From positions 350,964 to 414,963 of the forward strand of contig CAJFCJ010000026.1 of NCBI GenBank assembly GCA_904063045.1: a stretch of DNA of 64,000 nucleotides, in the 5' to 3' direction. Of the stretch, positions 3,601 through 39,670 are shown piece by piece. Below the pieces are notes generated by a model. That model was not told the DNA's origin. It made no database searches and saw only the letters and a program-made list of their open reading frames with translations. The position numbers and the translations under genes are program-made. The stretch comes from Dimorphilus gyrociliatus. Lineage: Eukaryota > Animalia > Annelida. The stretch's first letter is position 1. Each line of letters begins with the position of its first letter.

Positions 3601-3639
3601 TGGTTAACCCTAACCCTAACCCTAACTTTAAGTTTTTAT

Positions 3640-4186: not shown

Positions 4187-4393
4187 GGATGCTACAGAAA
4201 ACGTCCCCAAGTGCATGGTTTAACCCTAACCCTAACCTACCCCTTGTCTCTCTCTAACCTGTTTGATTACCCCTAACCCTTAGATGGAACCCCCCCTGAC
4301 TACAAATCAAAATCTACTTTACTTCTTTAGCCATTTTTCAATCTGAAATCTTGCTTTCAAAAATCTCACTTGGGGACGTTTTCTGTGGGCCCA
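4187..4393. mobile_element. Telomeric MITE (subfamily 1) with perfect 9-bp TSD
   Basis: TIRs ggatgctacagaaaacgtcccc / ggggacgttttctgtgggccca; TSD agtgttttt at 4178-4186 and 4394-4402. Confidence 0.95.
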
Positions 4394-4539: not shown

Positions 4540-6480
4540 ACCACACTATAAAAAAATTTAAACTGTGTTAATTTTGTGATTGGAAATTTGATTTCAGTAT
4601 TGTGTTTTGTTTAGGGGAGGGGAGAGGGAAACCACACTAGAACACAATTTTAAAAGAATTTTTTAAAAGGTGAAGCAAAAAAGAATGTATTTTTTTAGTC
4701 TTGTTTTAGCAAGTTTTATTTTAGAACGCTTTTTGTTTGAGACGGGAACCACGTTAAAATATATTTTTAGGAAAATTTTTTCAAGATAAAGCATACATTG
4801 TAAAATGTCTTTTTTTGGATTTGGACGGGAACCACACTAAAAAGCAGTTTTATTCTTCATATAGGAACAGAAACCACATTAGAATACATTTTATTGAAAA
4901 ATATTATCATACGTCTAAAAATGTGTTGATGTTAAAAAGTTTTGTTTCTTTGAGAAAAGTTTAAAAAACTAGGTTATAGAAATTAAGGAAGGAAACTTTT
5001 AAATAAAGTAGGAAAAAGACTTTAATTTAATAGTCACCGTGAACATATATCTTAGCAATATGATGCGACGGTGAAGACAATTCAGTTACTAACATCGTAT
5101 ACGTAGGGAGCCACGTATGACGTTACGTTTTATAAAGGAGATCGTGGCCCTCTGTTGGCTGTTATAAACGTTACTTAGCGTAACTTGTTTAACAGGAACC
5201 GCTCTGAAAATTTATTATTTATTTTGAAAGAAACCATACTAATTACTAAAACTATTTGCCGTTGATTGTTACACGTAAAAAAAATATTAAAATGTATTTT
5301 AGCGTGGTTCCCCTCTAAGAGACAAATGAAAAGTCTGGGTTAGCACATTTGGAAAAATATTGGTGTGTTTCGTATTCGAAACAAAAATGTATCTTGTTCT
5401 GGTATGATTTTTACTTCAAATAATATCATTTGTTTTGTCTGAAAAAAAAGTAACCATACTGCGTTTGCATTTAAAATATTCCCTTTTTCAATCATTAGTA
5501 TGGTTGCTATCCCTCATCTTTTTGAAAGAATACAATTAATTGTGGATTACCCATTTAAAATTCAATTATGAATTTAATTTTTGTTTTTCTAAGCGGACCA
5601 GAAGATATATTATTTTTCATGGAACCATATTTCAAAATGTACTTTTCTCGAAAACTATAAAAAACATACTTGTCGGTAAGAAAACCACACTAATAAGTAT
5701 TTTTAAATGTAGTTAATTTTTTTAAAAAAATGGTATGAATGGAATTCCTTTCTCGAAACATACTAAAAAATTGAAAATTTGTCATAATATGGGTGCCTGT
5801 TTGAGAATAGAATACTATTGAAAATATATTCTATTGAAGGTCTGTAGTGTTAAAACTGTACCAAAACAATACAACATCTATCATATATTTCACTTTGTAG
5901 AGGGGACCAGACTAGAATATTTGTGCTTTTGTTTCGGAAAGGGAAACCACACATTAAAAGAAATTCTAAGACACTTGAGGGGAAACATTTTTTTAAGAAA
6001 ACTTTTAAAAATTATTTATATTTGGATGGGAACCTCACTAAACTACGAATAAGTTGGACTAACTAAAACACACTTAAAACTTAAAATCAACAATTTCCAA
6101 TGCTCTGAACTAGTACTGAAAGGAACCACACTAAAAAATTGCTGTCTACTTTTACTATTGTTTTAAGAATCAGTCTAATTATCAAGTGAGAAGATTGTGT
6201 TTCAAACAATAGAAAAAGTTAAAATTGTGTTTATACATAATATATTGCATTATCAACAGGATCGAAACCATACTACATAAATATTTAAATGGCTTCTTTT
6301 TTTAGTACTTTTTAATGTGTTCTTTTAACTTTAGCATGGTTACAGTTCCTTACATTTTTGAAACAAGGCTTTTAAAAGAAAACCTATTTTTAATGCCAAA
6401 ATATATTTACGGACATTTTATAATGTATTTTTTTGGATCGGGACAGAAACCACATTAATATATATTTTCAAAGCAATTTG
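4540..6480 (+). repeat. GGAACCACACTA minisatellite array (contains solo LTR)
   Basis: Many aaccacact / aaccatact units. Confidence 0.75.
4997..5194 (-). mobile_element. BEL/Pao solo LTR
   Basis: Highly similar to LTR 19268-19475; starts TGTTAAAC on the minus strand; flanks ggaaac / ggaacc (imperfect TSD). Confidence 0.85.
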
Positions 6481-7919: not shown

Positions 7920-8165
7920 CTTTTACAAAATGGAGTACACCAGTTCTATTTGACAGACATAATGACAAAAGTCATCTGATTCAATATTGCTAATTAGAAA
8001 ATGACTAAGAACTACTTCCTCATTATCAATATCCATTGAAGATATTTCAAAATTTTCTTCAAACATATCCTTAGTTTTAGAATGTTCATTACACCTTCTT
8101 AAATATAAACCTGGTAAACATATCCAATGAAGTTTATGCGAACAAAGAAGCCATTTGACTTGCTT
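7920..8165 (-). pseudogene. MULE transposase N-terminal fragment (PHD-like remnant)
   Basis: LCSHKLHWICL...MDIDNEEVV resembles CSLCHHKVHWACL...MDVDHEEVV of the element at 47029-52303. Confidence 0.55.
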
Positions 8166-8372
8166 GGGGTCGACAGAAAACGTCCACAAATGAGAAATTT
8201 CAAGACTAGATTTTGGATTAAGAAATGGTTAGGAAGCAGAAGAGAGCAACTGATTTGTACTTAGGAAGATCTCCTCTAAGGGTTAGGGGTAATGCAAAAG
8301 GTTAGGTACTGCCAAGGGCTGGGTTAGGGTTAGGGTAAAAGCACTCATTTGTGGACGTTTTCTGTCGCATCC
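8166..8372. mobile_element. Telomeric MITE (subfamily 2)
   Basis: TIRs ggggtcgacagaaaacgtccacaaatga / tcatttgtggacgttttctgtcgcatcc; degenerate TSD gacttgctt / gccttgctg (7/9); G4 motif GGGCTGGGTTAGGGTTAGGG at 8316-8335. Confidence 0.92.
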
Positions 8373-8522
8373 GCCTTGCTGTTTTTTGCTAATTTTCTTA
8401 CAACACCCATAACAGAGACTGACATTTTCATCAGATTCTTTCCTATAGTGTCTTTTGGGTGAAAAAATTTTAAAGCTATTTAAAAATAAGCAACAATTGT
8501 ATTTGCAGATAATATGACGGTA

Positions 8523-10572: not shown

Positions 10573-10682
10573 GGATGCTGGACAAAATATCCCTTATTTT
10601 GAATTTTTATCCTAACCCTAACCCTAACCCTAACCCTAACTACACTAAATTTTACTCTCAAGTGACGTTTTGTCTCGACCAC
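10573..10682. mobile_element. Possible ~110-bp mini-MITE with (TAACCC)4
   Basis: ggatgctggacaaaatatccc ... gacgttttgtctcgaccac resemble the family TIRs; no clean TSD. Confidence 0.45.
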
Positions 10683-11680: not shown

Positions 11681-11935
11681 CTTAACCCTAACCCTAACCC
11701 TAACTCTAACCCTTTTTCAATCATTGAATCGTTTAAAATCAATTACTTTTTGTAATTTATAGGCTGAACAATGCGAATATATTTAATAATATTCTACAAA
11801 ACTCTTCAAAACATTCTCAATACTTAAATTAACAAGATAATCAATTTTCTTATCAAGTTGGAAAACCAATATTTCAAAATATAATTGAAAATTGTACGCA
11901 AATGAATCTCTGACACCATGAATTTCGATACGTCG

Positions 11936-12148
11936 TGTTGAATAAAGCAGGATAAGCTTTATTTTAATAGTCACCATTTATCGCAATGTTAACTTGGTGA
12001 AGACAATTCAGCTACTGGTCATCTGTTATGGAATTAAGAGCCACCTAGTGAGAGTGTTTAGGCCGTTTTAGAATACTGCAAAGCCCCCTGTTGGCTATCA
12101 GTACTATTGGACAACGTTTTCGTTATCCCTTTCATAAATTATTTAACA
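11936..12148 (-). mobile_element. BEL/Pao 3' LTR (213 bp, TG...CA)
   Basis: Preceded on the sense strand by PPT ggcggggag (12149-12157); similar to LTR 20408-20647. Confidence 0.9.
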
Positions 12149-14335
12149 CTCCCCGCCAAGAGGATGACAAAGTAACTGAATCCTCATTAAAAGGAGGATT
12201 TAATACTTCTTGTCCTGGGTCTTTCATAATGGCCGTCAGTGGTTTTGTAGAAATTGCATCTTCCGTGACAGCAAGTAGACTCCTCCAAACCTCATCTCTA
12301 AAATGATATGGAGCTCTGGGGCTTATGAAGCTCCACTTTCCATTAAATTTATTTGACACTTGGGTGAACGTTGCCGCATTATCTGACCTGATATTTATTA
12401 TAGGGCCTTTTAAATACCTCATTTTTAACAGAGCTAACTGAACGCTATCCTTACTCAAAGATTCAATTAGCTCCAAGGTAACGGCTTTTGTTTTCAAACA
12501 AATTCCTATGAGAACGTTCCTTTTTTCGCATTTTTAATTAAAAACGGTCCAAAAACATCTATTCCCCATCGATTCAAATGGAATAGGTTCTTCTATGATT
12601 TGATCCCTACAGGGCTGATTTGCGTTGTACTGGAATTTTCTGTTTTTTCTCCATTCTTCACACTCCTGACACTGGCCATAAACTTCATTCGCTAGAGCTA
12701 CCTCCGCAATTGTCCAAAATCGACGTCGCAATCTATGACGCTTGGCGTTAGGTCCAGAGTGACCAGTCCTCAAGTGAACGTACCTCAGTAATAATTTCGC
12801 CGCACTCATACTCTTATGAAGTAGTACTCTTGTTTCCTTGTTTCTTAGAACAACTTCCCATTGTCCCAATTAATTTCTGGACGTTTTTAACTTTTCCCTT
12901 GCCACAAGAGGTATAAGTTTCTGCTCTTCTGTGATTTTTCCGTTTATTACTAAGGTAAATTTAATTGGATTACCGGCTACTTCCTTCTTAAAATCCTCCT
13001 ATTGATCCCAAGGCAAGGATACCTTCCCCAAGAGGACTCTTTTCGTATTCTTATTTTCCATTATATTTTTTCAGCTCAAACCAATTTTCCTTTAATGATA
13101 AATCTTTTAACTTAGTTAATTGATCTGCAGGATTGTTATCTGTGGATACGTATTCCCATTGATGGTTGTCCGTGTGATTGAGAATTTTCTTTACTCTTTC
13201 TCTCTCGAAACGTACTAAAGGGATTGACATATTTTTAACCCTAACCCTAACCCTAAGCGTCCACATATACTCTGTAGGCAGAAGGGTTTCCTATATAATA
13301 TATTCCTATATATTGACTCCGTGATGAGGAATATAATTTACTATTGTAATATCTTTTGGTTAGGGAATTGCGATTTTCTCATTTAAGTATTCATTCATAA
13401 ATTCTCTCATCATATTCCTTTTCCAAGTCCGGATTTTTCTTAAAAGCTTTAAGTTGCTGTAACAGACGGTTTTCAGCCGTTTTCCGCGGGCAGAATTCTT
13501 TGAGGGTTCCGTTAGTAACCTCATTTATCAATAGCGGTGCTACGATTTTCTCATCCTCAATTATAGTTTTGTTTTCAAATCTTTTCGAGAGTATTTCGTC
13601 TTCTATGGATATTTTCATTTCCTTACTTTTGGGATTTTTAATTGCCATATTGCAATTAACATTTAGTTTGGCGTTTTTCTTGCCACCATAGCAAAACCAA
13701 CCCAGTTTATTTCTGATCAATGTCATTCCATTATGCAAGTTTTTTGAGTCTGTAGGATGCAATAACGAATAATAATCGTTACCTATTACCAATCCCACTC
13801 TCTTATTTTGAAGCTGAGGGATTTTGATGCCTCCGTCCTTAAATTCTTGTTCATCCACCATTTGCCTCGATCTGACAGCCATTTAGGTTCAATTTATACA
13901 AATTCGCAGTATGACGAATTACCCCAAGTCCATTTATAATCAGATCTGTCTGTCCGATAGATTTTACTTTCCACTTCCTCATTAAATCTTACCTTTGTTA
14001 TTATTTCACATTTGATTTAATTTTTCTGTCCAGTAAGTCTAACCTTTCTTCCAAACTATAAAGTTTTTGATCTAATAGTTCTGTGACTTGTTACAGAATG
14101 AATTTTCTTTAAATAACCTTTTATATCGCTCCTCTAGACGCAATATTTTGCCTTTAAATAGCATTATTAATTGTTCCTCCAAATGGATTAATTCTTCCTG
14201 TCGAGATGATTCTTCTTCTCGTACTGATTCATTTACGATAGGCAGGATTATCTTTTTAACCTTTGCGACTATTTTGTTTTCAAACTGATAACTATTATGA
14301 TGGAGGGCCGATAATCTATTAATTATTTGAAGCCA
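12149..14335 (-). mobile_element. BEL/Pao internal region, copy a (heavily deleted gag/PR/RT/RH/IN)
   Basis: IRSDNAATF, HxxxGHSG..FW..CxxC, WEYVSTDNNPAD, NYIPHHGV, VGLVIGND motifs; most of RT deleted at 13236. Confidence 0.9.
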
Positions 14336-17300
14336 ATCTTTTTCCAGTTATCTCTGGCTTTCTTACAGTTTTGCCAGTTTGCCATCAAGTCTCTATAATA
14401 CTTAATAAGAGTTTTTGGGCTTAGAACTTCTTGATCTGGGTCTTTCATAAGTGCCGGTAAGAGGTTTTGTGGAGACCGCTTCCTCAGCAACTGTGAGTAG
14501 ACTTCTCCAAATTTCGTCTTTAAAACAGTTCTTTAAATAAGGACGTAATATCCATTTCACTGTTCTGATTGATTGTTCCCACAAGCCTCCTTGATATGGA
14601 GCTCTAGGACTTAAAAACTTCCAATTCCCATTAAAATTCTTTGTAGCTTGGGCAAAGGTTGCTGCATTGTCTGATCTAATATTTGTTATAGGACCTCTTA
14701 AATATCTCATTCTTAATAGAGCTAGCTGAACACTGTTCTTGTTAAGAGATTCCATTAGTTCCAATGCAACAGCTTTTGTTTTCAAACACACTCCTATAAG
14801 GACATTCCTTTTATCACCATTTTTATTCGTGAATGGTCCAAAAACGTCTATTCCGATTGATTCAAAGGGAATCGGTTCACCAGTAATTTGATCCCTATAA
14901 GGTTGATTTCCATCATATTGAAACTTCTTGTTTTTCCTCCACTCTTCACATTCGTGACACTGATCGTAAACTTCGTTCGCTAACGTTACTTCTCCAATTG
15001 TCCAAAACAAACGCCTCAATCTATGACGCATGGCGTTAGGTCCAGAATGACCTGTTCTCAAATGCACATATCTCATGAGTACTTTCGCTGCACTCATGTT
15101 TTTATGCAGTAAAGTTCTTGTTTGTTTATTTCTTAGGACGACCTCCAATTGACCCAATTCATTTCTGGTCAATTTTAATTTTTCCATTGCTGGGGGAGGT
15201 ATAACTTTCTGTTTAATTGCGATTTTTTCGTTAATTAAATAGATAAATTTATTCGGATCACCCGCTACTTTTCTTTTAAAATCCTTCTCTTGCTCCCAAG
15301 GCTTTTCCCCAAGAGAACTTTTTGAACATTTTTTCTTTCCGTGGTATTTTCCAACTTAAACCAATTTTCCTTTAGGGAAAAATCTTTTAATTTTGTTAAT
15401 TTATCGGCTGGATTGTTCTCAGTGGGTACGTATTCCCATTGATAGTCATCTGTGTGATTAAGAATTTTCTTAACTCTTTCTCTCTCAAAACGTACTAAAG
15501 GGATCGATATGTTTTTGATATATGCCAGGACTGCTTTATTATCGGACAAGAATGTTGTTGTTTTCTTTTCCAATTTATAGGATTCAAACTCTAATGCTAG
15601 TTCAACACCTAATAAGGCCGCCATCAATTCTCTCCTCGGAGTCGACGATTTATTATCGGGATCGCCTTCCTTATTAAGGCGTGATTTCACTCCAATAATA
15701 TGCCAAGTTTTGTCTATAAAACCGTAAATAACTGCTCCATGACGATCCTTAGACGCATCTACCTATACCCGGTAAGCTGACGGGTTTCCAATATATCAAG
15801 GTAACTGAATTCTTTCGAGCAACTTTTTCGTTAGCATTTTCCATTCGTTTACGAATGGATCCGGGACTTTTGCATTCCAATTACTTGACTCCATATGACA
15901 ACATGCCTTTGACCATATAGTCTTAAACTCGGCTCTAATTGGCTCTATATAGTCAAGTGGGTCGAAAACTCTCATTAAAGCTGAATTCATTTCTCGATAT
16001 GACGGTTTCCAATTGCCACTCTAAGTAATCGTCCTTTGTATACTTGATTCCTAATATTCTTTCTGCCGTTGATTGATCTTCTCCAAATTTGGCAGCTAAT
16101 TCTGTTACATTAGAATCAAATTTAGTCAATTTAAAATAGGGCTTTAATGTCTCTTGCAAGTTTTTAGCCATTTGTTCTCATTCATCCAAATCATCACTTG
16201 ATTGCACCCAATTGTCGATATAGAAACTATTAGTAATTATTTCTTTCCATTCATGGTATAACTTTTCAGATTCTTCTATCAATTTTTGTAAGGATCTACA
16301 TGCTACGAAAGGAGAACCTTTTAAACCAAAGGTGTGTCTTGTTAAGACAAACTCCTTTATGTTTTCTTTGGTTTTATTAACTCCTTTTTCCCAATATAAA
16401 AATCCGCAATACTTATAATGCGACTTCAATAAATGGATTTGGTGAAACATTGCCTTTATGTCTGCAACAATGAGGTACCTTTTGAGACGAACCTTTATCA
16501 ATATTTTTCTAATGTTGTTGCTATTTTTTCGTTTAAATATTCATAAATTCTCTCATCATATTTCTTTTCCAAATCCGGATTATTCTTAAAAGCTTTAAGC
16601 TGCTGTAACAAACGGTTTTCTGCTGTTTTCCGCGGGCAGAATTCTTTGAGTGTTCCGTTAGTAACTTCATTTATTAGTAAAGGTGCTACAATTTTCTCAT
16701 CTTCAATTATAGTTTCCCTTTCAAACTTTTTTGAGAGTATTTCATCCTCTATTGATATTTTCGTTTCTTTACTTTTTGGGTTTTTAATTCAATATTGCAA
16801 TTAACTCGAATTTTAGTATCCTTTCTACTACTGTAACAAAACCAACCTAATTTGTTTTTGACCAAAGTCATTCCATTACCCAAGTTTTTAGAATCTGTGG
16901 GATGTAGTAACGAATAATAATCATTGCCCACTACCAATCCCACTCTTTTATTTTGAAGCTGGGGGATTTCGATGCTTCCAGACTTAAATTTTTGTTGATC
17001 CACTTTTGGCAAATGTTTAACACCATATGCCTCTATCTGGCATCAGTTTAAATTCAACCTATAGAAATTTGCAGTATGTCGAATTACCCCAAGTCCGTTT
17101 ATAACCAGATCTGTCTGTCCGATAGGTTTTACTTGCCACTTCTTCATCAAGTCTTCCCTTACTAGCGTAATGTCTGATCCAGTATCTCCTATTGCAACCA
17201 AATTTTGTCGTTTAGCATTAACCTTAATTTCGACTATATTTGCTGTTTTTGCTTTATTTTCTACAACTAGCAATGCATTTTCAATCTTTCTACAATTATG

Positions 17301-19267
17301 CAAAGCAGAATGGACTTGTTGATGGCACCCGTCACATGATTTTTTGGTACAATTTCTAGATTTATGACCAATTTTTAAACAGTTTAGACATCTGTTTAAT
17401 TTGGTTAATTTTTCTTTTCTTATAAGTTTACTGTCCCTTTCGAACTCCGGGCACTCTGACATCCTATGTCGGCCTTCGCAGTAATAACATGTTATTCTCC
17501 CAATCTGATGATCTTTCGGATAATCTTTATTTCTACCTTCATTCCTATGCACAGACTTTTGTGAATCGGGAATCGAAGAATATTGTAAATAGACTGCTTT
17601 ACTTTGCTGAGATTCTAAGAATTTAATCAACTCTATTTCAGGTTCATATTCATCTGTGCCAATTTTACTTTTAGTTCTTTTTACCCATAACTCCTTTAGT
17701 GGTTCGGTAAAATTACCAACTGCAACAGCAACCATTGGTCGGACCTGTTTTGCTCCAAACAATTTTATGGTACTTCTTATATATTCTGCGAGATTGATTA
17801 AAGTATCGCCGGTACTTATATCCAGTTTCCCGTAACCATGAATTCTGTTAACCATTTCCTCGTATTTGTCTATTCTGTTAAAGTGGCGATCTAGTCTCTC
17901 TAGAGCAGATTCAAAACTTCCGCTTGGATGGGAAGCATATTCTTGGATTAGAGTCTTTACTGATTCATCTAATCGTGACATCAAAGCTTCAAATTTAACA
18001 TAACTGTCAACATTCGGAAACTTCTCTGAAAATGTTCCTATTCGGCGTCTGAATACGTCATACTCTACAGGGTTTCCTCTGAATTCTGTTATTCGACCAA
18101 ATAAATCTTTAATTTCTTCCTCTGAGGATTTACTTCTGCTAAAGTTCATACAGCAATTACTTAGGTTTCCTTTCATATTCGATTTCATTTTTCCGTCCAG
18201 CAACTCTAGCTTTTCTTCCAAACCATAAAGTTTTTTATCTAATAACTCTGTAACTTGTTCCTTTATACAGAACGAGTTTTCTCTAAATAACCTTTTATAT
18301 CGCTCCTCTAGACGCAATATTTTGCCTTTAAAAAGGTTTATTAATTGTTCCTCCAAGTGAATTAGTTCTTCCTGTCGAGATAATTCTTCTTCTCGTACAG
18401 CTTCATTTATGATAGGCAGGATTATCTTTTTAACCTTTGCGACGATTTCGTTTTCATACTGATAACTATTATGTTGGAGGACTGATAGTCTATTAATTAT
18501 TTCTTTTGATTTATCCTCCAAATCCTTTTTCTCCAGACTTCCGATTTTGGTAGCTCTGAGTTTATTGAATTTGAATCTTCGTAATCTTCTAAAGGAGGGA
18601 ATTCTTCTTCGAAAGATCTTTGTTCCAAAACGTGAGTTTCTTTTGATTTGAATTTTGTCTCTTTCATCCAAAATTCTGAATTAAAGGGTTTCTTTACAAA
18701 CTTCGCTGTTTGTAACCAACCGTTATCATTGTCCTCTTCCTTTGGAACATATAATCCATCTTTAATATTCTCCTCCATTTTTTCTAACCAGCTTCCGATT
18801 TCGTTAAGATCTGAGGAACAATACATTCCAACTTTCTCTCTTGTCCAAATTAAGATGTCCTTAACGTACCAAATTTTAGCTAGAACTTTGGCCCTTGTGT
18901 GGCTCTTTCTTGCTTAAATCCTTAAAAGAGGAGTTTTTTGGTGTAACAACCTTGAGACTAACGCACTTTTTAATTGAGATGGCAATATTGAATCTTCGAA
19001 TTCATCAGAATTTATATTACTCGCCATTTTAATTTTCAAAAATTTTCCAACGGTCAACGTTCTATCTTCCCAACGGTTATAAATACCTTTAATTCTCGAT
19101 TATTGAAAATATTCTCTTCTACCGAACAATTAGAAATATTCTTAACTCTCAACGGATAAGATATTCTCTATTTTCGAACGTAGGAACAATCTAAATTCTC
19201 CTTCCTGAATTGTCCCGAAAACGTAAAACGAATTTTGTTACTTTTGAGAACTTTGTATTGTCTTCAC
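14336..19267 (-). mobile_element. BEL/Pao internal region, copy b (gag-pol broken by frameshifts and deletion)
   Basis: Gag with three knuckles CYYCEGRHRMSEC, CLNCLKIGHKSRNC, CDGCHQQVHSALH; PR AIGDTGS; RT ADIKAMFHQI, FGLKGSPF, FYIDN; RH PRRELMAA, NPAD; IN GIDVFGP, SDNAATF, APYQGGLWE. Confidence 0.95.
17043..18826 (-). pseudogene. BEL/Pao gag-protease reading frame (frameshift near 18500)
   Basis: ORFs 18497-18826 and 17043-18671; DUF1759-like FRGNPVEY..KFEALMSRL..ALERLDRHF. Confidence 0.85.
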
Positions 19268-19475
19268 TTTTGAATAAAGTAGGAGAAAGACTTTAATTTA
19301 ATAATCACCGTGAACATGTATCTTAGCGATATATGCGAAGGTGAAGAAAATTCAGTTACTGATCGTATACGCAGGGAGCCACCTTGCGGGAGTTCGCATG
19401 ACGTTACGTTTTATAAAGGAGATCGTGGCCCTCTGTTGGCTATTATAAACGTTAATTAGCGTAACTTATTTAACA
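19268..19475 (-). mobile_element. BEL/Pao 5' LTR, copy b
   Basis: Sense TGTTAAATAA...TTATTCAAAA, immediately followed by GTGAAGACAAT (19257-19267). Confidence 0.9.
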
Positions 19476-20106
19476 AAAATGGAGGTAAAGTTTCTGGCAG
19501 GTATTTGAAATAATGTAAAAATTCCAACTTGACTGAATAATTTATCACGTATCCTTTATTTTGGATGACAAGACGTCATCTCTTTTTTATGCAGCTATAT
19601 AAATCTTTTACATTGTCTTCAGAAATCAAAAAAATATTCCTCTTCCTCCATCTTGTTTTGTCTTAAAAAAGATTAAGATACTTTTAAAGTGTGGCATCGT
19701 GCTCCATCCTGTTCAAAGATGTTCTCCGTCTTATAGATAGGAAGTAGACACTCTTTTTAAAGTTGAGATATATTTCTCTCAGTCTATTCATTGCTTTTGT
19801 CGATAATGGCCTAAAATGTTAAATTATTTAATTAGTATGGTTTCTTTCTTAAGTATATCATATACAAAACGATAACAAATTATTTATAACAAAACACACT
19901 TTCTATCATAAAGCCATAGTGTGCTGTTAAGGGAATAGAAACCACATTAAAGTAATATGTGTTATTTCTTTCTAAAATTAAGCATTTGAGAAAAATTTTA
20001 AAACGCTTTGATCTGAACAGGACGGGAACCATACTATATATATTTTAATTCCCTTGTGAAAAAAATATTAACTTAATCATTTAATGTGTATTATAGGTGT
20101 TGAGGG

Positions 20107-20403
20107 GGACAGAAACCACACTAAAATACCCGTGAAAAAAGCGCAAAAAATTTAAAAAAGTTTTATTATTTTGGACAGGACGGGAACCAGTTTAGAAAAA
20201 GATGTATAATTTAATAATTAAAGAGAGTATTCATTTTAAATTGAAATGAAAAATCGAAAGTTAAAAGGTTTTTTAGTTCAACGAAAATGAAAATTTATCT
20301 TAAAATTCCCAAAAGTAACAATCAAAACATTGCTTTTACATTGAATAGGGGGCTGGAGCCGTACTAAAATTTATTTCAATATCTGTTGTTTTTGAAGGGG
20401 CAG
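20107..20403 (+). repeat. ~297-bp near-identical direct duplication (copy 1; copy 2 at 24662-24958)
   Basis: ggacagaaaccacactaaaatacccgtg ... tttgaaggggcag present twice with few differences. Confidence 0.9.
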
Positions 20404-22138
20404 TAACTTTTGAATAAAGTAGGATGAACTTTATTTTAAACGTCACCGTAATCAAGGATCTTTATTTACAAGATCTTGAGTCGGTGAAGACAATTAAGCT
20501 ACTGATAGTCTAATAACTGGTAAGAGCCACCTGGCGAGGGTGTATAACCCGTTTTAATATATCGCAAAGCCCTCTGTTGGCTGTACAAGTACTATCGAAC
20601 AACGAATCTTATGAGATTGTTTGTACCCTATCATAAATTATTTAACACTCCCCGCCAAGAAGGTGACAAGCATCTGAGTCCTCACCAAAGTACACAAAAA
20701 AAACATACATATAACAAAGAATCCAATGAAAAAGTTATTACTTACGCTTATGCGAATTTCTTTCCCGTCTGAGCTCCTGACTTCAGCATTCCTAATTTTC
20801 CCATCATCTGACTTGATCAACTGAGAAATTTTCGCTTTTTCATACTCAGCTCGGGTTTTTATCATTGTTGATTAACACTTTTTGCCCAACCTTTCTTATC
20901 TTCTCTAACTTCTCTCTATACCTCTTCCAACATTTCTTTATTCCATCTAAAGCAAATTTTCTTCCAATTTTCTCTGGCTCTCCTAGAATTTTGCCAATTC
21001 GCCACTAAGTCTCGATGATACTTAGCAAGTGTTTTTGGACTTGGTACTTCTTGATCTGGATCCTTCATAAGGGCGGTGAGAGGTTTTGTTGAAATTGCTT
21101 CCTCTGCGATGGCCAGCAGACTCCTCCAAATATTATCCCTAAAATGATTCTTTAGATAAGGACGTAAAATCCATTTAACTGTTCTAATTGAACGCTCACA
21201 AAGACCTCCCTGATACGGTGCTCTGGGGCTAATGAAACTCCATTTTCCATTAAATTCCTTTGATGCTTGGGTGAAAGTCGCCGCATTATCCGATCTAATA
21301 TTTCTCATAGGACCTCTTAAGTATCTTATCGTTAATAGCGCTAGCTGAACACTGTTTTTATTCCATGATTCGATCAATTTTAACGCAACAGCTTTTGTCT
21401 TTAAGAAAATTTTCATGAGGACATTCATTTTTTCACCATTTTTATTTGTGAATGGTCCAAAGACATCTATTCCTATTGAACGGGATAGGTTCGCCGATGA
21501 CTTGATCCCTGCAAGGCTGATTTGCGTCATACTTACTTTGTTTTTTCTCCACTTCTCGCTCTCCTGACACTGGCCGTAAATCTCGTTTGCTAATAATACC
21601 TCCCCGATTGTCCTAAACAGACGCCGTAATCTATGACGCTTGGAGTTGACGCTTTATCATCAGGATCGCCTTCCTAACCTAACCGTAACCCTTTCTTAGC
21701 CATCTACTCCAATTCTTCTAAGTCGTCGCTTGTTTGCACCCAATCGTCCATGTAGAAATTCTTAGAAATTACTTCTTTCCATTCAGGAAGTAAGTTTTTT
21801 GATTCTCCAATCAACCTTTGTAAAGATCTGCATGCCAGGAAGGAAGAGCCCTTTAGAGTCTAGTTAATACAAACTCTTTAATGTTTTCCTTAGTTTTATT
21901 AACTCCTTTCTCCCAGTATAAGAACCCGCAATACTTATAATGCGTTTTCAATAATATTTTTTCAGACGAATCTTTTTACTATTTCTCGGATATTATTCTT
22001 TGGGGATTCCATTGGTAACTTCATCTATCAATAGTGGTGCTGTAATTTTGTCATCTTTGAATCTTTTGGAAAGCACTTCATCTTCTATGAATATTTTTAT
22101 CTCCCTGTTTTTTGGATTTTTAATTGCAACATTGCAAT

Positions 22139-22345
22139 GGGACCTGTCGAAAACGGCCATACATAAAATATTTGAAGTTTAGATTTCAAGCTGGGAAATG
22201 GTTATGAGGAATAAGATAAGTATTGATATGTACTTAGGTTTGTCCCATCTAAGGGTTAGGGGCATTGAAAAAGGTTAGGCAAAACCAAGGGCTAGGTTAG
22301 GGTTAGGGTAAAACAGTAAATTTATGGCCGTTTTTTACCACATCC
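22139..22345. mobile_element. Telomeric MITE (subfamily 3) inserted in BEL pol, perfect 9-bp TSD
   Basis: TSD cattgcaat at 22130-22138 and 22346-22354; flanks rejoin to the sequence seen at 13640-13690. Confidence 0.95.
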
Positions 22346-22583: not shown

Positions 22584-22791
22584 GGGGCCGACATAAAACG
22601 TCCCCAAATGAGATTTTTCAGAGCAACATTTCGGATTGAAAAATGGGTGGCAGGAGTAAAGTAGCTTTTGATTCATAGTTAGGGGGGTTCCACCTAAGGG
22701 TTAGGAGTAATCAAAAAGGTTAAGGAGAGACAAGGACTAGGTTAGGGTTAGGGTTAAAAGCGTGCATTCGGGGACGTTTTCTGTAGTATCC
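22584..22791. mobile_element. Telomeric MITE, twin of 1500-1707
   Basis: Near-identical, within the duplication ~1452-2290 / ~22535-23370. Confidence 0.9.
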
Positions 22792-24044
22792 GTTGGCATC
22801 CGTCGGATGGCTTTCTGGTACAATTTTGTGGAAAATGACGAATTTTGAAGGAATTTAAACAAAGATTTAATTGAAAAAATTTACTGTCTTTTTAAAACTC
22901 TGAAGAGTCTGACATCCGGTGTTGGCCTTCGCAGTCTACTGCTGGGGGCGTCTCTCTTGGGATTCTAAAATTGAACTCATTCTTTTTCAGGTTCATACTC
23001 GTTAGTGCCAACTTTATCCTTAGTTCACTTCACCCACAATCCTTGCAAGGATTCGCTAAAACTGGCAAGCACAACAGCAAGCGTTGGTCTAACATGTTCT
23101 GCACCAAACTGCTCTGTGGGATCTCCTTTGATCTACCGAAATTCACGCAGCAATCATTAAATTTCCTCTCATCATTCCAATCTTTTCTCTCTTCTCTACG
23201 ATAGAATTTTTCTTCTCATAGTTCAATCACTTGTTCTTTTGTACAAGATGATTTTTCTTTCAATAGCTTTAGTAATCGTTCCTCCAAACGAGCTAACTCT
23301 TTTTTTAACCAGCTGATTATTCCTCTTCTACTCATTCATTTACGATAGGCAAGATTATCCTTTAGCCCTTGTGTGACTATTTCCCGCATAGATCCGTCTA
23401 AGTGGGGCTTTCTTATGTAATAACTTTGTAACTAAGGCGCTTTTTAGTTGAGACGGCAATATGGAATCTTTGGAATCATCACAATTCATATTACTTGCCA
23501 TTCTTAAATTTAAACATTTAACGGTCAAAACGTTCTTTTTCTCAAACGATCAAAAACGTTCTTTTCTTCTAAACAGTTAGGAATATTTTCAACTCCAAGC
23601 TATCAAAAAGATTCTCTTCTTCCAAAACGATTAGAGATATTCTTAACTCCAAACGATTAAGATATTCTCTTCTTTCGAATGTAAAGAATAATACAATTTA
23701 TCCTTACCGAATTGTCCCAAAAACGTACTCGAATTCGTTTAATATACTCCAAAGTATTTTAAACTACTTTTCTTGTTGACGACTTCGTATTGTCTTCACT
23801 TTAGAATGAAGCAGGATAAGCTTTATTTCAATAGTCAACGTAATCAAAAAGATGTTGAGGCGGTGAAGACAATTCACCTAATGACTATTTGTCGGTAAGA
23901 GCCACCTGGCGAGGGTATATAAGACGTTTTAATATACCGCAAAATAACCAAAATAAGGGGATTGTTAAACATTGTGCACATCCTCAGAAAAGAATATAAA
24001 TCCAATTTAAAAACAAAAGAGTTATATTAAGAAAATAATCCCCT

Positions 24045-24223
24045 TAACCCTAACCCTAACCCTAACCCAGCCCTTAGCTGTACCTAACCTTTTGCATTAC
24101 CCCTAACCCTTAGAGGAGACCCTCCTAAGTACAAATCAGTTGCTGTTTTCTTCTGCCTAACCATTTCTCAATCCAAAAACTTGTCTTGAAATTTCTGATT
24201 TGTGGACGTTTTCTGTCGACCCC
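24045..24223. mobile_element. Telomeric MITE truncated at its (TAACCC)4 tract
   Basis: Body and right TIR gtggacgttttctgtcgacccc match 2765-2972; left TIR absent. Confidence 0.88.
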
Positions 24224-24659
24224 ATTGAAAATTGTACTCAAATAACAGTATTATGTTTATCCAAATGTCATTTCGTTAAAGCAATTGGCAGTGTAAATTG
24301 GTAAGGCAATTTGTTGTAATCTAAATTCTAAAGTTGGAAAATCAATATTTCGAAATATTACAGAAAATTGTACTAAATTAACAGACCTACGTTTATCCAG
24401 TTGTTGTTTCAATTAATATATTGACAGTTTTTTTACTAAAGCAATTGGTTGTAATCAACAACTTAGCATTTTAAATTTGCAAGAAAATAGACTAGCATTT
24501 TTGAAAATCTTGTCCATATTTACTATAATAGAGGTCGACTAATAAATCCGGACATAAAGGATATTACTTTAAACTTGGATATATACAGTCCCAATAAAAA
24601 ATCTTGGGCAGATATTTATAAAACTGAATTTAAAGATAACATTCATTTCAACATTTTTT

Positions 24660-37659: not shown

Positions 37660-38200
37660 GCTCTCTTGTATTTTGATGTCATGAAAATGAAGGCCAGGGG
37701 CACATGTTTCATGTTGCCATTCTTTTTCACATAGGATTGGATTGTCAATAATTGGTAAAATGGTTCTTTTACTATTTTAAATGTTCCATCAACAAACCAA
37801 TGCCCTCATTTTCTCAACAATTTAGGGTTTGGGTTAGGGTTAGGGTTAGGTTTTTTGTTTCAAATATAAGAATCCTTTCATTGTTTTCACAGATGTCTTT
37901 CTTCAGAAAGTTGTCTGGGTTGAAATCCATATTTTATTAAAATTCATAATCTTTTGGTTCCATTGGCCTTTTCTTTTGCTCGGTTGAATTGGCCATCCTT
38001 TTCAAATATTGCATGTTTGGTAGAAAATCACTATTAGTTAGAGTGAAGGAAAATCATCCATCCTTCCAGTCACATTACTCTCTTCTAGATCTTGATCTTG
38101 ATTTTGACTTCTTTCATTATAGTAACTTTCTTCTATATCTTGATGTTCATTTCCATCATTAATGTCACTCTCATCCATATTTATGTATGTTAATTAATTT
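37660..38200 (-). pseudogene. MULE transposase fragment carrying a telomeric insertion
   Basis: NFLKKDICENNERILIF...HWFVDGTFKIVKEPFYQL. Confidence 0.8.
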
Positions 38201-38939: not shown

Positions 38940-39670
38940 ACTTGAATGTGTGTCAGTTAGGCACATATCCCTTCAATCTTTCCTGATTGATATATTGAAT
39001 GATAAACTTTGATTTGCTCCATGAATGGGTTTTTTGTCTAGTGAATTTCTTTGTTAATGAATTCTTGTAGGACATCTCTGCTTTTTAGTTCTCTTACTCC
39101 ACACTCAAATACTACTTTTAGAAGTTTTAGCATTGAGTGTGAAGGGAAATCCATTGTGTATCAGAATGTACTTTCCCAGTTGACTTCTAACCCTAATTAT
39201 TTGAAAATCATTATCCATAACTTCTTGGAAAGTGTCAACAGCATTCACTGATATTTCATCATAATTTGCATTCAAATCTCTCAAAACCATCACCTTTTCT
39301 GTTATCCGTTGCCTCTTCATCAATCTTATCATCTCCATTCTCATTCATTGCAACAGTCTCTCTTTCATTCATTGATCTTCTAGTCTAAACCTAACCCTGA
39401 CCCTAACCCTAACCCTAACCCTGATTGAATTCTTACTGATGATAGATTTTTCATAGCACACAGAATTTTCTCTTCTGTCTTCCATAAACTGTAAGTTTAC
39501 AATTTTTGTACTTGATTGCAGATTTTAAAAATGTTTAATTTATTATTTGAAGAAAAGTGGAAAACTTTGAAACAAATATTTGTAATACTATTTCAAGATT
39601 CTCTTATCAAGTAATCAATAAACAAATTCAAAATGGCTGACCTGGAAAAAAAACTGGTACTTGTTCTCAT
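38940..39670 (-). pseudogene. Fragment of the MULE family found at 52736-54716
   Basis: NAVDTFQEVMDNDFQII..SQLGKYILIHNGFPFTL; shared 5' sequence ctcttatcaagtaatcaa..aaaatggctgacc. Confidence 0.85.

What the first reader, a model, noticed from the sequence alone, without database searches (positions are those of the whole stretch)
19257..19351. BEL/Pao element with a Tf1-like self-priming signature instead of a tRNA PBS
Seen: both 5' LTRs are followed with no spacer by sense GTGAAGACAAT (19257-19267 and 23789-23799), not by a TGG tRNA-type PBS. The exact complement ATTGTCTTCAC lies inside the LTRs (5071-5081, 11997-12007, 20484-20494, 23863-23873; one mismatch at 19341-19351) and is conserved across two otherwise diverged LTR subfamilies. 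Known: fission yeast Tf1 primes reverse transcription by pairing the first 11 nt of its transcript with the PBS. Inference: self-priming in a BEL/Pao lineage, which I do not recall being described. Caveat: the TATA-like motif is about 50 nt upstream of the predicted start, not about 30.
Basis: partly seen in the sequence, partly recalled or inferred. Interest (0 to 1): 0.85.

Follow-up and report, generated by a model that had tools for sequence, protein, structure and literature searches.

The report
Self-priming BEL/Pao retrotransposon lineage
A small, divergent lineage of BEL/Pao jumping genes carries, exactly where the tRNA primer site should be, a sequence that pairs with a stretch of its own LTR, so it most likely starts DNA copying with a piece of its own RNA, a trick so far described only in the two other LTR-retrotransposon superfamilies.

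Summary
Decayed BEL/Pao elements lie on the minus strand. Both 5' LTRs are followed, with no spacer, by GTGAAGACAAT. Its complement ATTGTCTTCAC lies 63-73 nt upstream inside every LTR copy.

LTR ends are fixed by solo LTRs with 5-bp target duplications. None of the 62 genomic copies of the 11-mer lies in a tRNA gene.

The pairing covaries. A sister subfamily in the same genome has ATTGTCTTTAC in the LTR and GTAAAGACAAG after it. The closest relatives come from other samples and have different sequences at the same two places: 16/16 complementary in L096 and 15/15 in L099. Eight of the first 13 positions show two or more Watson-Crick pair types.

Ordinary BEL/Pao controls from a firefly and a mite have TGG-type tRNA sites and no LTR complement.

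A second covarying helix (xxACCGT/ACGGTxx) spans the presumed cut site, AC|CG.

The best reading is Tf1-like self-priming in a BEL/Pao clade, a family that ICTV describes as tRNA-primed. This is a new variant of a known mechanism.

Not shown: the transcript start (no RNA data could be had), the cleavage, or any activity. All copies in this genome are dead.

The parts
19268..19475 (-). 5' LTR of element Y (208 nt; TGTTAAATAA...TATTCAAAA)
   Evidence: Boundaries from motif mapping and from alignment with solo LTRs that carry target-site duplications.
19257..19267 (-). Primer-binding position of element Y: GTGAAGACAAT, directly after the LTR
19341..19351 (-). Presumed self-primer in the Y 5' LTR (ATTTTCTTCAC; one decay mismatch against the PBS)
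   Evidence: The 86%-similar LTR at 4997-5194 keeps the intact G.
19304..19310 (-). U5 partner (CGGTGAT) of 'helix A', which pairs with the last 4 primer bases plus the following CG(T)
   Evidence: It covaries with the primer in the T subfamily.
19291..19297 (-). Poly(A) signal variant ATTAAAG, in a hairpin with the LTR end (AATAAAGT/ACTTTATT in other copies)
14330..19256 (-). Decayed internal region of element Y. Gag-PR piece at 17046-18680, RT at 16181-16540, Pao RT-connection/RNase H (PF05380) at 15268-16020, integrase at 14405-15355.
   Evidence: Pfam and tblastn collinearity with P0004 residues 389-1638.
23800..23971 (-). 5' LTR of element Z (172 nt, with an internal deletion in U3)
23789..23799 (-). 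Primer-binding position of element Z: GTGAAGACAAT
23863..23873 (-). Presumed self-primer ATTGTCTTCAC in the Z 5' LTR, 11/11 complementary to the PBS 63 nt downstream
   Evidence: The fold closes on this duplex (z = -4.1).
20408..20647 (-). 3' LTR of element Z, with a primer copy at 20484-20494. It is preceded by the polypurine tract GGCGGGGAG at 20648-20656.
11936..12148 (-). 3' LTR of truncated element X (ends ...TATTCAACA), with a primer copy at 11997-12007. PPT at 12149-12157.
4997..5194 (-). Further LTR copy of the Y subfamily, with an intact primer at 5071-5081 and helix-A partner CGGTGAC at 5033-5039. No PBS follows it.

Best explanation
These are dead copies of a divergent BEL/Pao LTR retrotransposon family that primed minus-strand DNA synthesis with its own RNA, not with a host tRNA.

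Proposed mechanism:
1. The genomic RNA starts at or just upstream of ATTGTCTTCAC in the 5' LTR.
2. This stretch folds back over about 63-77 nt of R-U5 and pairs with GTGAAGACAAT, which begins at the first base after U5.
3. A cut after ...AC, before CG, frees a 3'-OH that sits exactly where the LTR boundary requires the primer end to be.
4. RT extends it through U5 and R as strong-stop DNA. Copying the primer back during plus-strand synthesis then regenerates the PBS, which keeps the two sites complementary as they drift.

A second helix pairs the last primer bases plus CG(T) with ACGGTxx in U5 and competes for the primer's 3' end. It may present or hide the cut site.

Shown here: the anatomy, the absence of a tRNA match, the covariation, the thermodynamic plausibility, and the contrast with ordinary BEL/Pao elements. 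Inferred: the transcript start, the cleavage and the priming itself.
For: 1. The PBS position is defined independently by the LTR ends. Solo LTRs with 5-bp target duplications all end at ...CAAAA, and in all five to seven 5' junctions GTRAAGACAA follows at once.

2. There is no TGG-type site. All 62 genomic occurrences of the 11-mer were inspected: 50 non-LTR loci hold no tRNA by ARAGORN. The window has no tRNA and no Rfam hit.

3. Covariation inside the genome. The T subfamily (12 LTRs, 5 junctions) has ATTGTCTTTAC, GTAAAGACAAG and U5 CGGTAAC. The C type has ATTGTCTTCAC, GTGAAGACAAT and CGGTGAC.

4. Covariation across relatives.
- In L096 (encoding P0004, the closest full-length relative) ACAGTTATCTGTTGAC pairs with GTCAACAGATAACTGT, 16/16.
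- In L099 (TARA metagenome scaffold) the LTR ends ...TTTGACA and is followed by GTCAACGATTAAGTG, whose 15/15 complement lies 97 nt upstream.
- Of the first 13 positions, 8 show >=2 Watson-Crick pair types, with 1 non-pair in 53 cells.
- No shuffle in 100,000 reached 15 or 16 nt.

5. Controls. BEL/Pao elements of Photinus and Galendromus, with 100%-identical LTRs, have TGGCGACCG... and TGGTGCCGTGG... sites 2-5 nt after the LTR and no LTR complement of >=8 nt.

6. Folds close on the primer:PBS duplex with z-scores of -4.1 to -6.1.

7. All primers end ...AC and are followed by CG. Helix A covaries as TC:GA, TT:AA and TG:CA.

8. Hints that the RNA starts at the first paired base.
- Complementarity stops sharply at 10-16 nt.
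- The L096 contig begins exactly at that base.
- L099 has TATA(G) 33 nt upstream of it.
Against: - No RNA data exist for this organism in the tools, and the one run laid on the window behaves like DNA. The transcript start is therefore unknown.
- In the window's LTRs the conserved TATA-like motif is 63-64 nt upstream of the 11-mer. An Inr-like TCAGTA lies 12 nt upstream inside the conserved block, so the primer may carry a 5' overhang.
- Every copy in this genome is broken, and the paired LTRs are 72-94% alike. Nothing here is active.
- Within the genome the covariation is a single lineage event.
- The start of the L096 contig could be an assembly break rather than an RNA end. Its 3' end stops exactly 30 nt into the LTR, as a k=31 graph break would.
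- The tRNA test was exhaustive only for the exact 11-mer, not for shorter or mismatched tRNA fragments.
Confidence: 0.75

Rival explanations
1. The LTR segment and the post-LTR sequence form a long-range 5'-UTR stem used for packaging, dimerisation or translation control (like retroviral U5-leader stems). The true primer is then an unidentified host RNA.
For: The pairing and its covariation prove a conserved RNA or DNA duplex, not priming as such. A second helix and a poly(A) hairpin show that the region is a structured leader. The TATA position in the window's LTRs does not point to a start at the 11-mer.
Against: The paired sequence starts at the very first base after U5 in every lineage. 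That is where the primer's 3' end must sit to produce the observed LTR boundary. A host primer would have to change in step with the element in different hosts and subfamilies. There is no TGG and no tRNA match.
Confidence: 0.13
2. A tRNA half or internal tRNA fragment (copia-like priming), or another abundant host RNA, complements the PBS.
For: Half-tRNA priming exists in Ty1/copia lineages (PMC6317226). Only exact 11-mer matches were screened exhaustively.
Against: None of the 62 exact genomic sites lies in a tRNA gene. The PBS differs between subfamilies of one genome in step with the LTR. It is entirely different in relatives, again in step with their own LTRs.
Confidence: 0.04
3. The motif after the LTR is conserved for another reason, for example as a splice donor (AAA|GTRAAG), and the LTR complement is a coincidence carried along by descent.
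For: GTGAAG and GTAAAG fit GTR at a 5' splice site. The copies within the window are related by descent.
Against: Relatives have GTCAAC, a poor donor, yet keep 15-16 nt of perfect complementarity. Shuffle probability is <=1e-4 per element. Three sites covary.
Confidence: 0.03

Closest known systems
Tf1/Tf2/Tj1 and the Tf1/sushi-Tcn1 group of Ty3/gypsy chromoviruses (self-primed reverse transcription)
   Same: - No tRNA-type PBS.
- A 10-16 nt stretch of the 5' LTR is complementary to the sequence at the PBS position (11 nt in the window, as in Tf1).
- A structured R-U5 lies between the two.
- A defined site sits right after the paired stretch, where a cut would create the primer.
(Mechanism as summarised in PMC7175516, and PMC4600332.)
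   Different: - Different superfamily: Pao RT-connection domain PF05380, DUF5641 tail, BEL/Pao polyprotein homologues, and no chromodomain.
- The start of the RNA at the first paired base, and RNase H cleavage, are experimentally shown for Tf1 but untested here.
- An extra covarying helix spans the cut site.
TAR lineage of plant Ty1/copia (Houba, Osr-1): self-priming predicted in silico
   Same: The inference rests on the same sequence criterion, LTR complementarity of >=10 nt starting 0-5 nt after the 5' LTR (PMC6317226). It also shows that self-priming has arisen outside Ty3/gypsy.
   Different: Plant copia elements are unrelated in pol phylogeny and host. Here the inference is additionally backed by cross-lineage compensatory changes.
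Ordinary BEL/Pao (Belpaoviridae/Semotivirus) elements
   Same: Gag with CCHC knuckles, PR-RT-RH-IN order, PF05380 and DUF5641 domains, short LTRs starting TGT, 5-bp target duplications, and a purine tract before the 3' LTR.
   Different: - ICTV describes the family as primed by host tRNA (Arg or Gly) through an 18-nt PBS (PMC8742986).
- The firefly and mite controls have such sites. This lineage does not.
- Its gag lacks the DUF1759 (PF03564) match that nearly all the ordinary BEL/Pao hits have.
- Many of its LTRs end ...AA instead of ...CA.

Membership tests
BEL/Pao (Belpaoviridae) LTR retrotransposons | Pao-type RT-connection/RNase H region (Pfam PF05380) and BEL/Pao polyprotein homology | tested here: met
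   PF05380 scores 32.2 and 23.1 bits against a 22.3 cut-off at window 15799-16020 and 15268-15762. HMMER against 1.84 billion proteins returns BEL/Pao polyproteins. P0004 carries RVT_1, PF05380, H2C2, rve and DUF5641 in that order.
BEL/Pao (Belpaoviridae) LTR retrotransposons | Gene order gag-PR-RT-RH-IN between LTRs, with a PPT and a short target duplication | tested here: met
   Element Y is collinear with P0004 residues 389-1638. PPT GGCGGGGAG lies before the 3' LTRs. 5-bp TSDs flank solo LTRs.
BEL/Pao (Belpaoviridae) LTR retrotransposons | PBS complementary to the 3' end of a host tRNA (the ICTV family description) | tested here: not met
   No TGG follows the LTR. No tRNA gene lies at any exact genomic copy of the complement. 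Controls L103 and L104 do have such a site.
Self-primed LTR retrotransposons (mechanistic class founded by Tf1) | >=10 nt of the 5' LTR complementary to the sequence starting 0-5 nt after the 5' LTR | tested here: met
   11/11 at offset 0 in Z, 10/11 in the T subfamily, 16/16 in L096 and 15/15 in L099.
Self-primed LTR retrotransposons (mechanistic class founded by Tf1) | The complementary stretch is the very 5' end of the element mRNA | not testable with these tools
   No RNA run was available, and the run that was laid is DNA-like. Only indirect hints exist: the sharp end of complementarity, the L096 contig start, and a TATA at -33 in L099.
Self-primed LTR retrotransposons (mechanistic class founded by Tf1) | RNase H-dependent cleavage after the paired stretch, and strong-stop cDNA primed from it | not testable with these tools
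   This needs biochemistry. The sequence shows only a conserved AC|CG context.
Tf1/sushi group of Ty3/gypsy (phylogenetic family) | Ty3/gypsy chromovirus pol | tested here: not met
   Domains and nearest homologues are BEL/Pao.

The most novel reading that the evidence does not exclude
Self-priming arose independently in a third LTR-retrotransposon superfamily. A small BEL/Pao clade of marine invertebrates uses the first 10-16 nt of its RNA as primer, with a conserved AC|CG cut site. A covarying alternative helix acts as a switch that hides or presents the primer's 3' end. If so, the ICTV family trait 'primed by host tRNA' is not universal. Primer choice would then be evolutionarily labile across all LTR-element superfamilies.
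Probability: 0.4. Interest if true: 0.75.

Novelty: new variant of a known kind. Interest (0 to 1): 0.62.

Why it matters
The way reverse transcription is primed is treated as a family-level trait of LTR elements and retroviruses. BEL/Pao is described as tRNA-primed. Self-priming has been shown only for Tf1 relatives (Ty3/gypsy) and predicted for one plant copia lineage.

A BEL/Pao clade with a covarying self-primer would mean the mechanism has evolved, or been retained, in all three superfamilies. That bears on the old proposal that ancestral LTR elements were hairpin-primed (PMC3601003).

It also matters practically. Annotation pipelines that accept only tRNA-type PBSs will miss or mis-delimit such elements.

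The conserved AC|CG site and the competing helix give a concrete, small RNA substrate on which to test how an RT/RNase H recognises and cuts an RNA duplex.

Tried and rejected
- **RNA evidence for the transcript start.** The look-up of sequencing runs returned one run not on record as RNA. Laid on 17500-21000, it gave contigs crossing the LTR's 5' boundary, which is DNA-like, and no starts.
- **Homologues of the gag-PR piece.** None were found among word-sharing candidates.
- **More clade members.** A second full-length search with P0153, a metagenome scan with the three-protein alignment (only 22-23% relatives) and a look-up of the L099 gag added nothing new.
- **Other BEL/Pao families of this genome (L093-L095).** No usable 5' LTR was found; they are truncated or rearranged.
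- **Near-matches to the LTR-PBS junction.** Two (L091, L092) are chance hits without an LTR.
- **L102, an ordinary BEL/Pao with 99.8%-identical LTRs.** It has no TGG near the LTR and only an 8-nt LTR complement at offset 0. That is too short to call either way.
- **tRNA family search of the genome.** It scored only 63 of about 4,500 candidates, so it is not a complete tRNA set. I relied on the exhaustive 11-mer pattern search instead.
- **Splice-donor reading of GTRAAG.** Rejected because relatives have GTCAAC.
- **Papers not held.** The Lin & Levin and Esnault & Levin papers could not be read. The two BEL/Pao surveys I could read do not discuss priming.
- **Consensus lines.** Those printed automatically by the alignment tools were not used.

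Full report
**Observation.** Read on the minus strand, which is the sense strand of the elements, GTGAAGACAAT lies at 19267-19257 and 23799-23789. Its complement ATTGTCTTCAC lies at 23873-23863, 20494-20484, 12007-11997 and 5081-5071. The copy at 19351-19341 is ATTTTCTTCAC.

**What the elements are.** The first 25 kb of the window is a graveyard of retroelement fragments, all in one orientation.
- The pieces at 14330-19256 carry a weak Pao-type protease match (DUF1758), RVT_1, the Pao RT-connection domain PF05380 above its cut-off, and an integrase zinc domain.
- They are collinear with residues 389-1638 of a 1751-aa BEL/Pao polyprotein, P0004. P0004 itself has RVT_1, PF05380, H2C2, rve and DUF5641 in that order.
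- BEL/Pao is therefore confirmed.
- All copies are broken. Element Z (23971-20408) is a 3.6-kb deletion derivative whose two LTRs are only 75% alike and lack a shared target duplication. Elements Y and X (19475-11936) form a composite with two integrase regions.

**LTR boundaries.** A search of the window's own genome (77.9 Mb, 349 contigs) found about 25 LTR copies.
- Solo and 3' LTRs all end ...CTTTATTCAAAA (two end ...CAACA) and diverge immediately afterwards.
- They begin TGTTGAATAAG or TGTTAAATAA.
- Three solo LTRs have perfect 5-bp target duplications.
- A purine tract, GGCGGGGA(A/G), precedes 3' LTRs.
- The LTR is thus about 200-240 nt, and the sequence after the 5' LTR starts at the first base past U5. 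This matters because the U5 end marks where the primer's 3'-OH sat.

**No tRNA.** The bases after the LTR are GTG/GTA, not TGG.
- The exact complement occurs 62 times in the genome, against about 50 for the reversed control.
- Twelve of these are in LTRs already held. The other 50 were fetched. ARAGORN found no tRNA in any of them, and four more proved to be LTR copies.
- The window has no tRNA and no Rfam match.
- This test is exhaustive for the exact 11-mer only.

**Covariation inside the genome.** A second subfamily ('T': 12 LTRs and 5 LTR-PBS junctions, two of which are a duplicate pair) has ATTGTCTTTAC in the LTR and GTAAAGACAAG after it. The C-to-T change in the LTR is matched by G-to-A at the pairing base.
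- The same LTR base also pairs with a U5 segment. C-type LTRs have TCACCG(T)...(A)CGGTGA, and T-type LTRs have TTACCGT...ACGGTAA.
- Three sites have therefore changed together.
- Broken copies show single mismatches, as expected for decay: Y5 in the primer and Z5 in the U5 partner.

**Relatives elsewhere.** An exhaustive HMMER search with the 317-aa integrase piece gave only five close cluster representatives (E 1e-85 to 1e-30). After those came a plateau of thousands of generic BEL/Pao proteins. Three full or near-full relatives could be read in their contigs.
- L096 (encoding P0004) starts ACAGTTATCTGTTGAC. At bases 90-105, just before the gag ATG, it reads GTCAACAGATAACTGT, which is 16/16 complementary.
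- L099 is a TARA ocean metagenome scaffold, 61% identical to P0004. It has a canonical LTR (TGTCAAATATA...TATATTTGACA) followed at once by GTCAACGATTAAGTG. The 15/15 complement, CACTTAATCGTTGAC, lies 97 nt upstream in the LTR.
- L098 holds only 30 nt of LTR on each side. That fits a k=31 graph break at the LTR edges, and so independently places its LTR end right before GTCAATACAACTCC.
- Anchored at the primer's 3' end, 8 of the first 13 positions show two or three different Watson-Crick pairs among the four lineages, with one non-pair in 53 cells.
- No shuffle in 100,000 reproduced the 15- or 16-nt matches. The 11-nt match appeared in 0.013% of shuffles.

**Controls.** Ordinary BEL/Pao elements with 100%-identical LTRs, from a firefly (L103) and a predatory mite (L104), have TGGCGACCGTGACAGG and TGGTGCCGTGGCC 2-5 nt after the LTR. 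They have no LTR complement of 8 nt or more. A third ordinary element (L102) is ambiguous: no TGG, and an 8-nt complement at offset 0.

**Structure.** RNA from the first paired base to the PBS folds with the primer:PBS duplex closing a three-way junction. The z-scores are -4.1 (Z5), -6.1 (L096), -5.2 (L099) and -4.6 (T type).
- Inside lie helix A and a hairpin that holds the AAUAAA signal (AAUAAAGU/ACUUUAUU).
- Helix A (xxACCGT/ACGGTxx) spans the presumed cut site. It competes with the inner 3-4 bp of the primer duplex.
- It covaries as TC:GA, TT:AA and TG:CA.
- All four primers end ...AC and are followed by CG.

**Transcript start.** This is the weak point.
- No RNA run was available, and the single run behaves like DNA.
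- In the window's LTRs the conserved TATA-like motif begins 63-64 nt upstream of the 11-mer.
- The conserved block extends 12 nt upstream and contains an Inr-like TCAGTA, so the RNA may start a little upstream of the paired stretch.
- Three hints favour a start at the first paired base:
  - Complementarity ends sharply there in every lineage. This is expected if the PBS is regenerated by copying the primer to its 5' end.
  - The L096 contig begins at that base, although an assembly break cannot be excluded.
  - L099 has TATAG 33 nt upstream.
- A cut after ...AC would yield a usable primer in either case.

**Mechanism.** The parsimonious reading is Tf1-like self-priming: fold-back of the RNA's 5' end onto the PBS, cleavage after the duplex, and extension. 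A host primer would have to change in step with each element lineage and subfamily. A purely structural stem would not explain why pairing begins exactly at the U5 boundary. Confidence is 0.75.

**Comparison with what is known.**
- In Tf1 the first 11 bases pair with the PBS and RNase H cuts between bases 11 and 12 (PMC7175516).
- Self-priming is implicated in Tf1/sushi/Tcn1 elements from fungi to vertebrates (PMC4600332) and predicted for the TAR copia lineage (PMC6317226).
- Searches of the held library for BEL, Pao and self-priming terms together found no paper making this link. Closed-access literature could not be checked.
- I therefore class this as a new variant of a known kind: a known mechanism in a new superfamily.

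**Host.** Genome size, about 31% GC and TTAGGG repeats are compatible with that, but I did not test it.

Noticed in passing
window, about 20 places, e.g. 2802-2860, 3608-3625, 10610-10639, 11686-11709, 13239-13256, 24042-24112, 37822-37851, 39395-39424: Short blocks of telomere repeat (TTAGGG)2-5 are scattered through the window: 43 matches against 0.09 expected. Many sit at the edges of transposon fragments or inside a roughly 200-nt repeat family (1500-1709, 2763-2979, 4187-4392, 8165-8373, 22149-22345, 22584-22792, 24051-24224). One block lies just upstream of the Z 5' LTR. The window is in the middle of an 866-kb contig.
   Followed up: partly
window 19810-20744: A contig of the one public run that holds this region joins 19809 directly to 20745 with no other differences. 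In that sample, 935 bp including the Z 3' LTR are absent. This is either a deletion/insertion polymorphism or an assembly difference.
   Followed up: no
window 1-25000, minus strand: All BEL/Pao fragments, and most other repeat fragments, lie in the same orientation. They are chimeric: the LTR pairs are 72-75% alike, share no target duplication, and the integrase region is duplicated.
   Followed up: no
LTR ends: window 19268, 20408, 4997; L012-L019; L096 base 89; L098 base 30: Most LTRs of this lineage end ...AA (TTCAAAA, TTTGAAA, TTCTAAA) rather than the canonical ...CA. Their 5' ends are canonical TG. A few copies (window 11936, L080, L099) do end ...ACA.
   Followed up: partly
L016/L014 (G000 contig C75), about 40 nt upstream of the 3' LTR; weaker in window 20665-20690: T-subfamily elements carry GGTGAAGAC just upstream of the polypurine tract. 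This second site could pair with 8 nt of the primer, with one G-U pair in the T type. Relatives lack it, so it may be chance.
   Followed up: no
L099 bases 22-51: In the TARA relative the primer is preceded in the LTR by an imperfect copy of its own PBS (GGTCAACGATAAGG). The two together form a hairpin that would lie in U3 if transcription starts at the primer. It may be a footprint of primer copying during reverse transcription.
   Followed up: no
L102 bases 1483-1602: An ordinary BEL/Pao element (with DUF1759 gag and 99.8%-identical 662-bp LTRs) has no TGG near its LTR end. It has an 8-nt LTR complement (TTTTCTAC/GTAGAAAA) starting at the first base after the LTR. Non-tRNA priming may be commoner in BEL/Pao than assumed.
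   Followed up: partly
G000 contig C75, about 86500-86840 (locus L032 bases 1-340, L006): Part of the 5' LTR region of the best-preserved T-subfamily element reads as N (withheld or an assembly gap). Its full 5' LTR could therefore not be compared with its 3' LTR; the part that is held is 94% identical.
   Followed up: no
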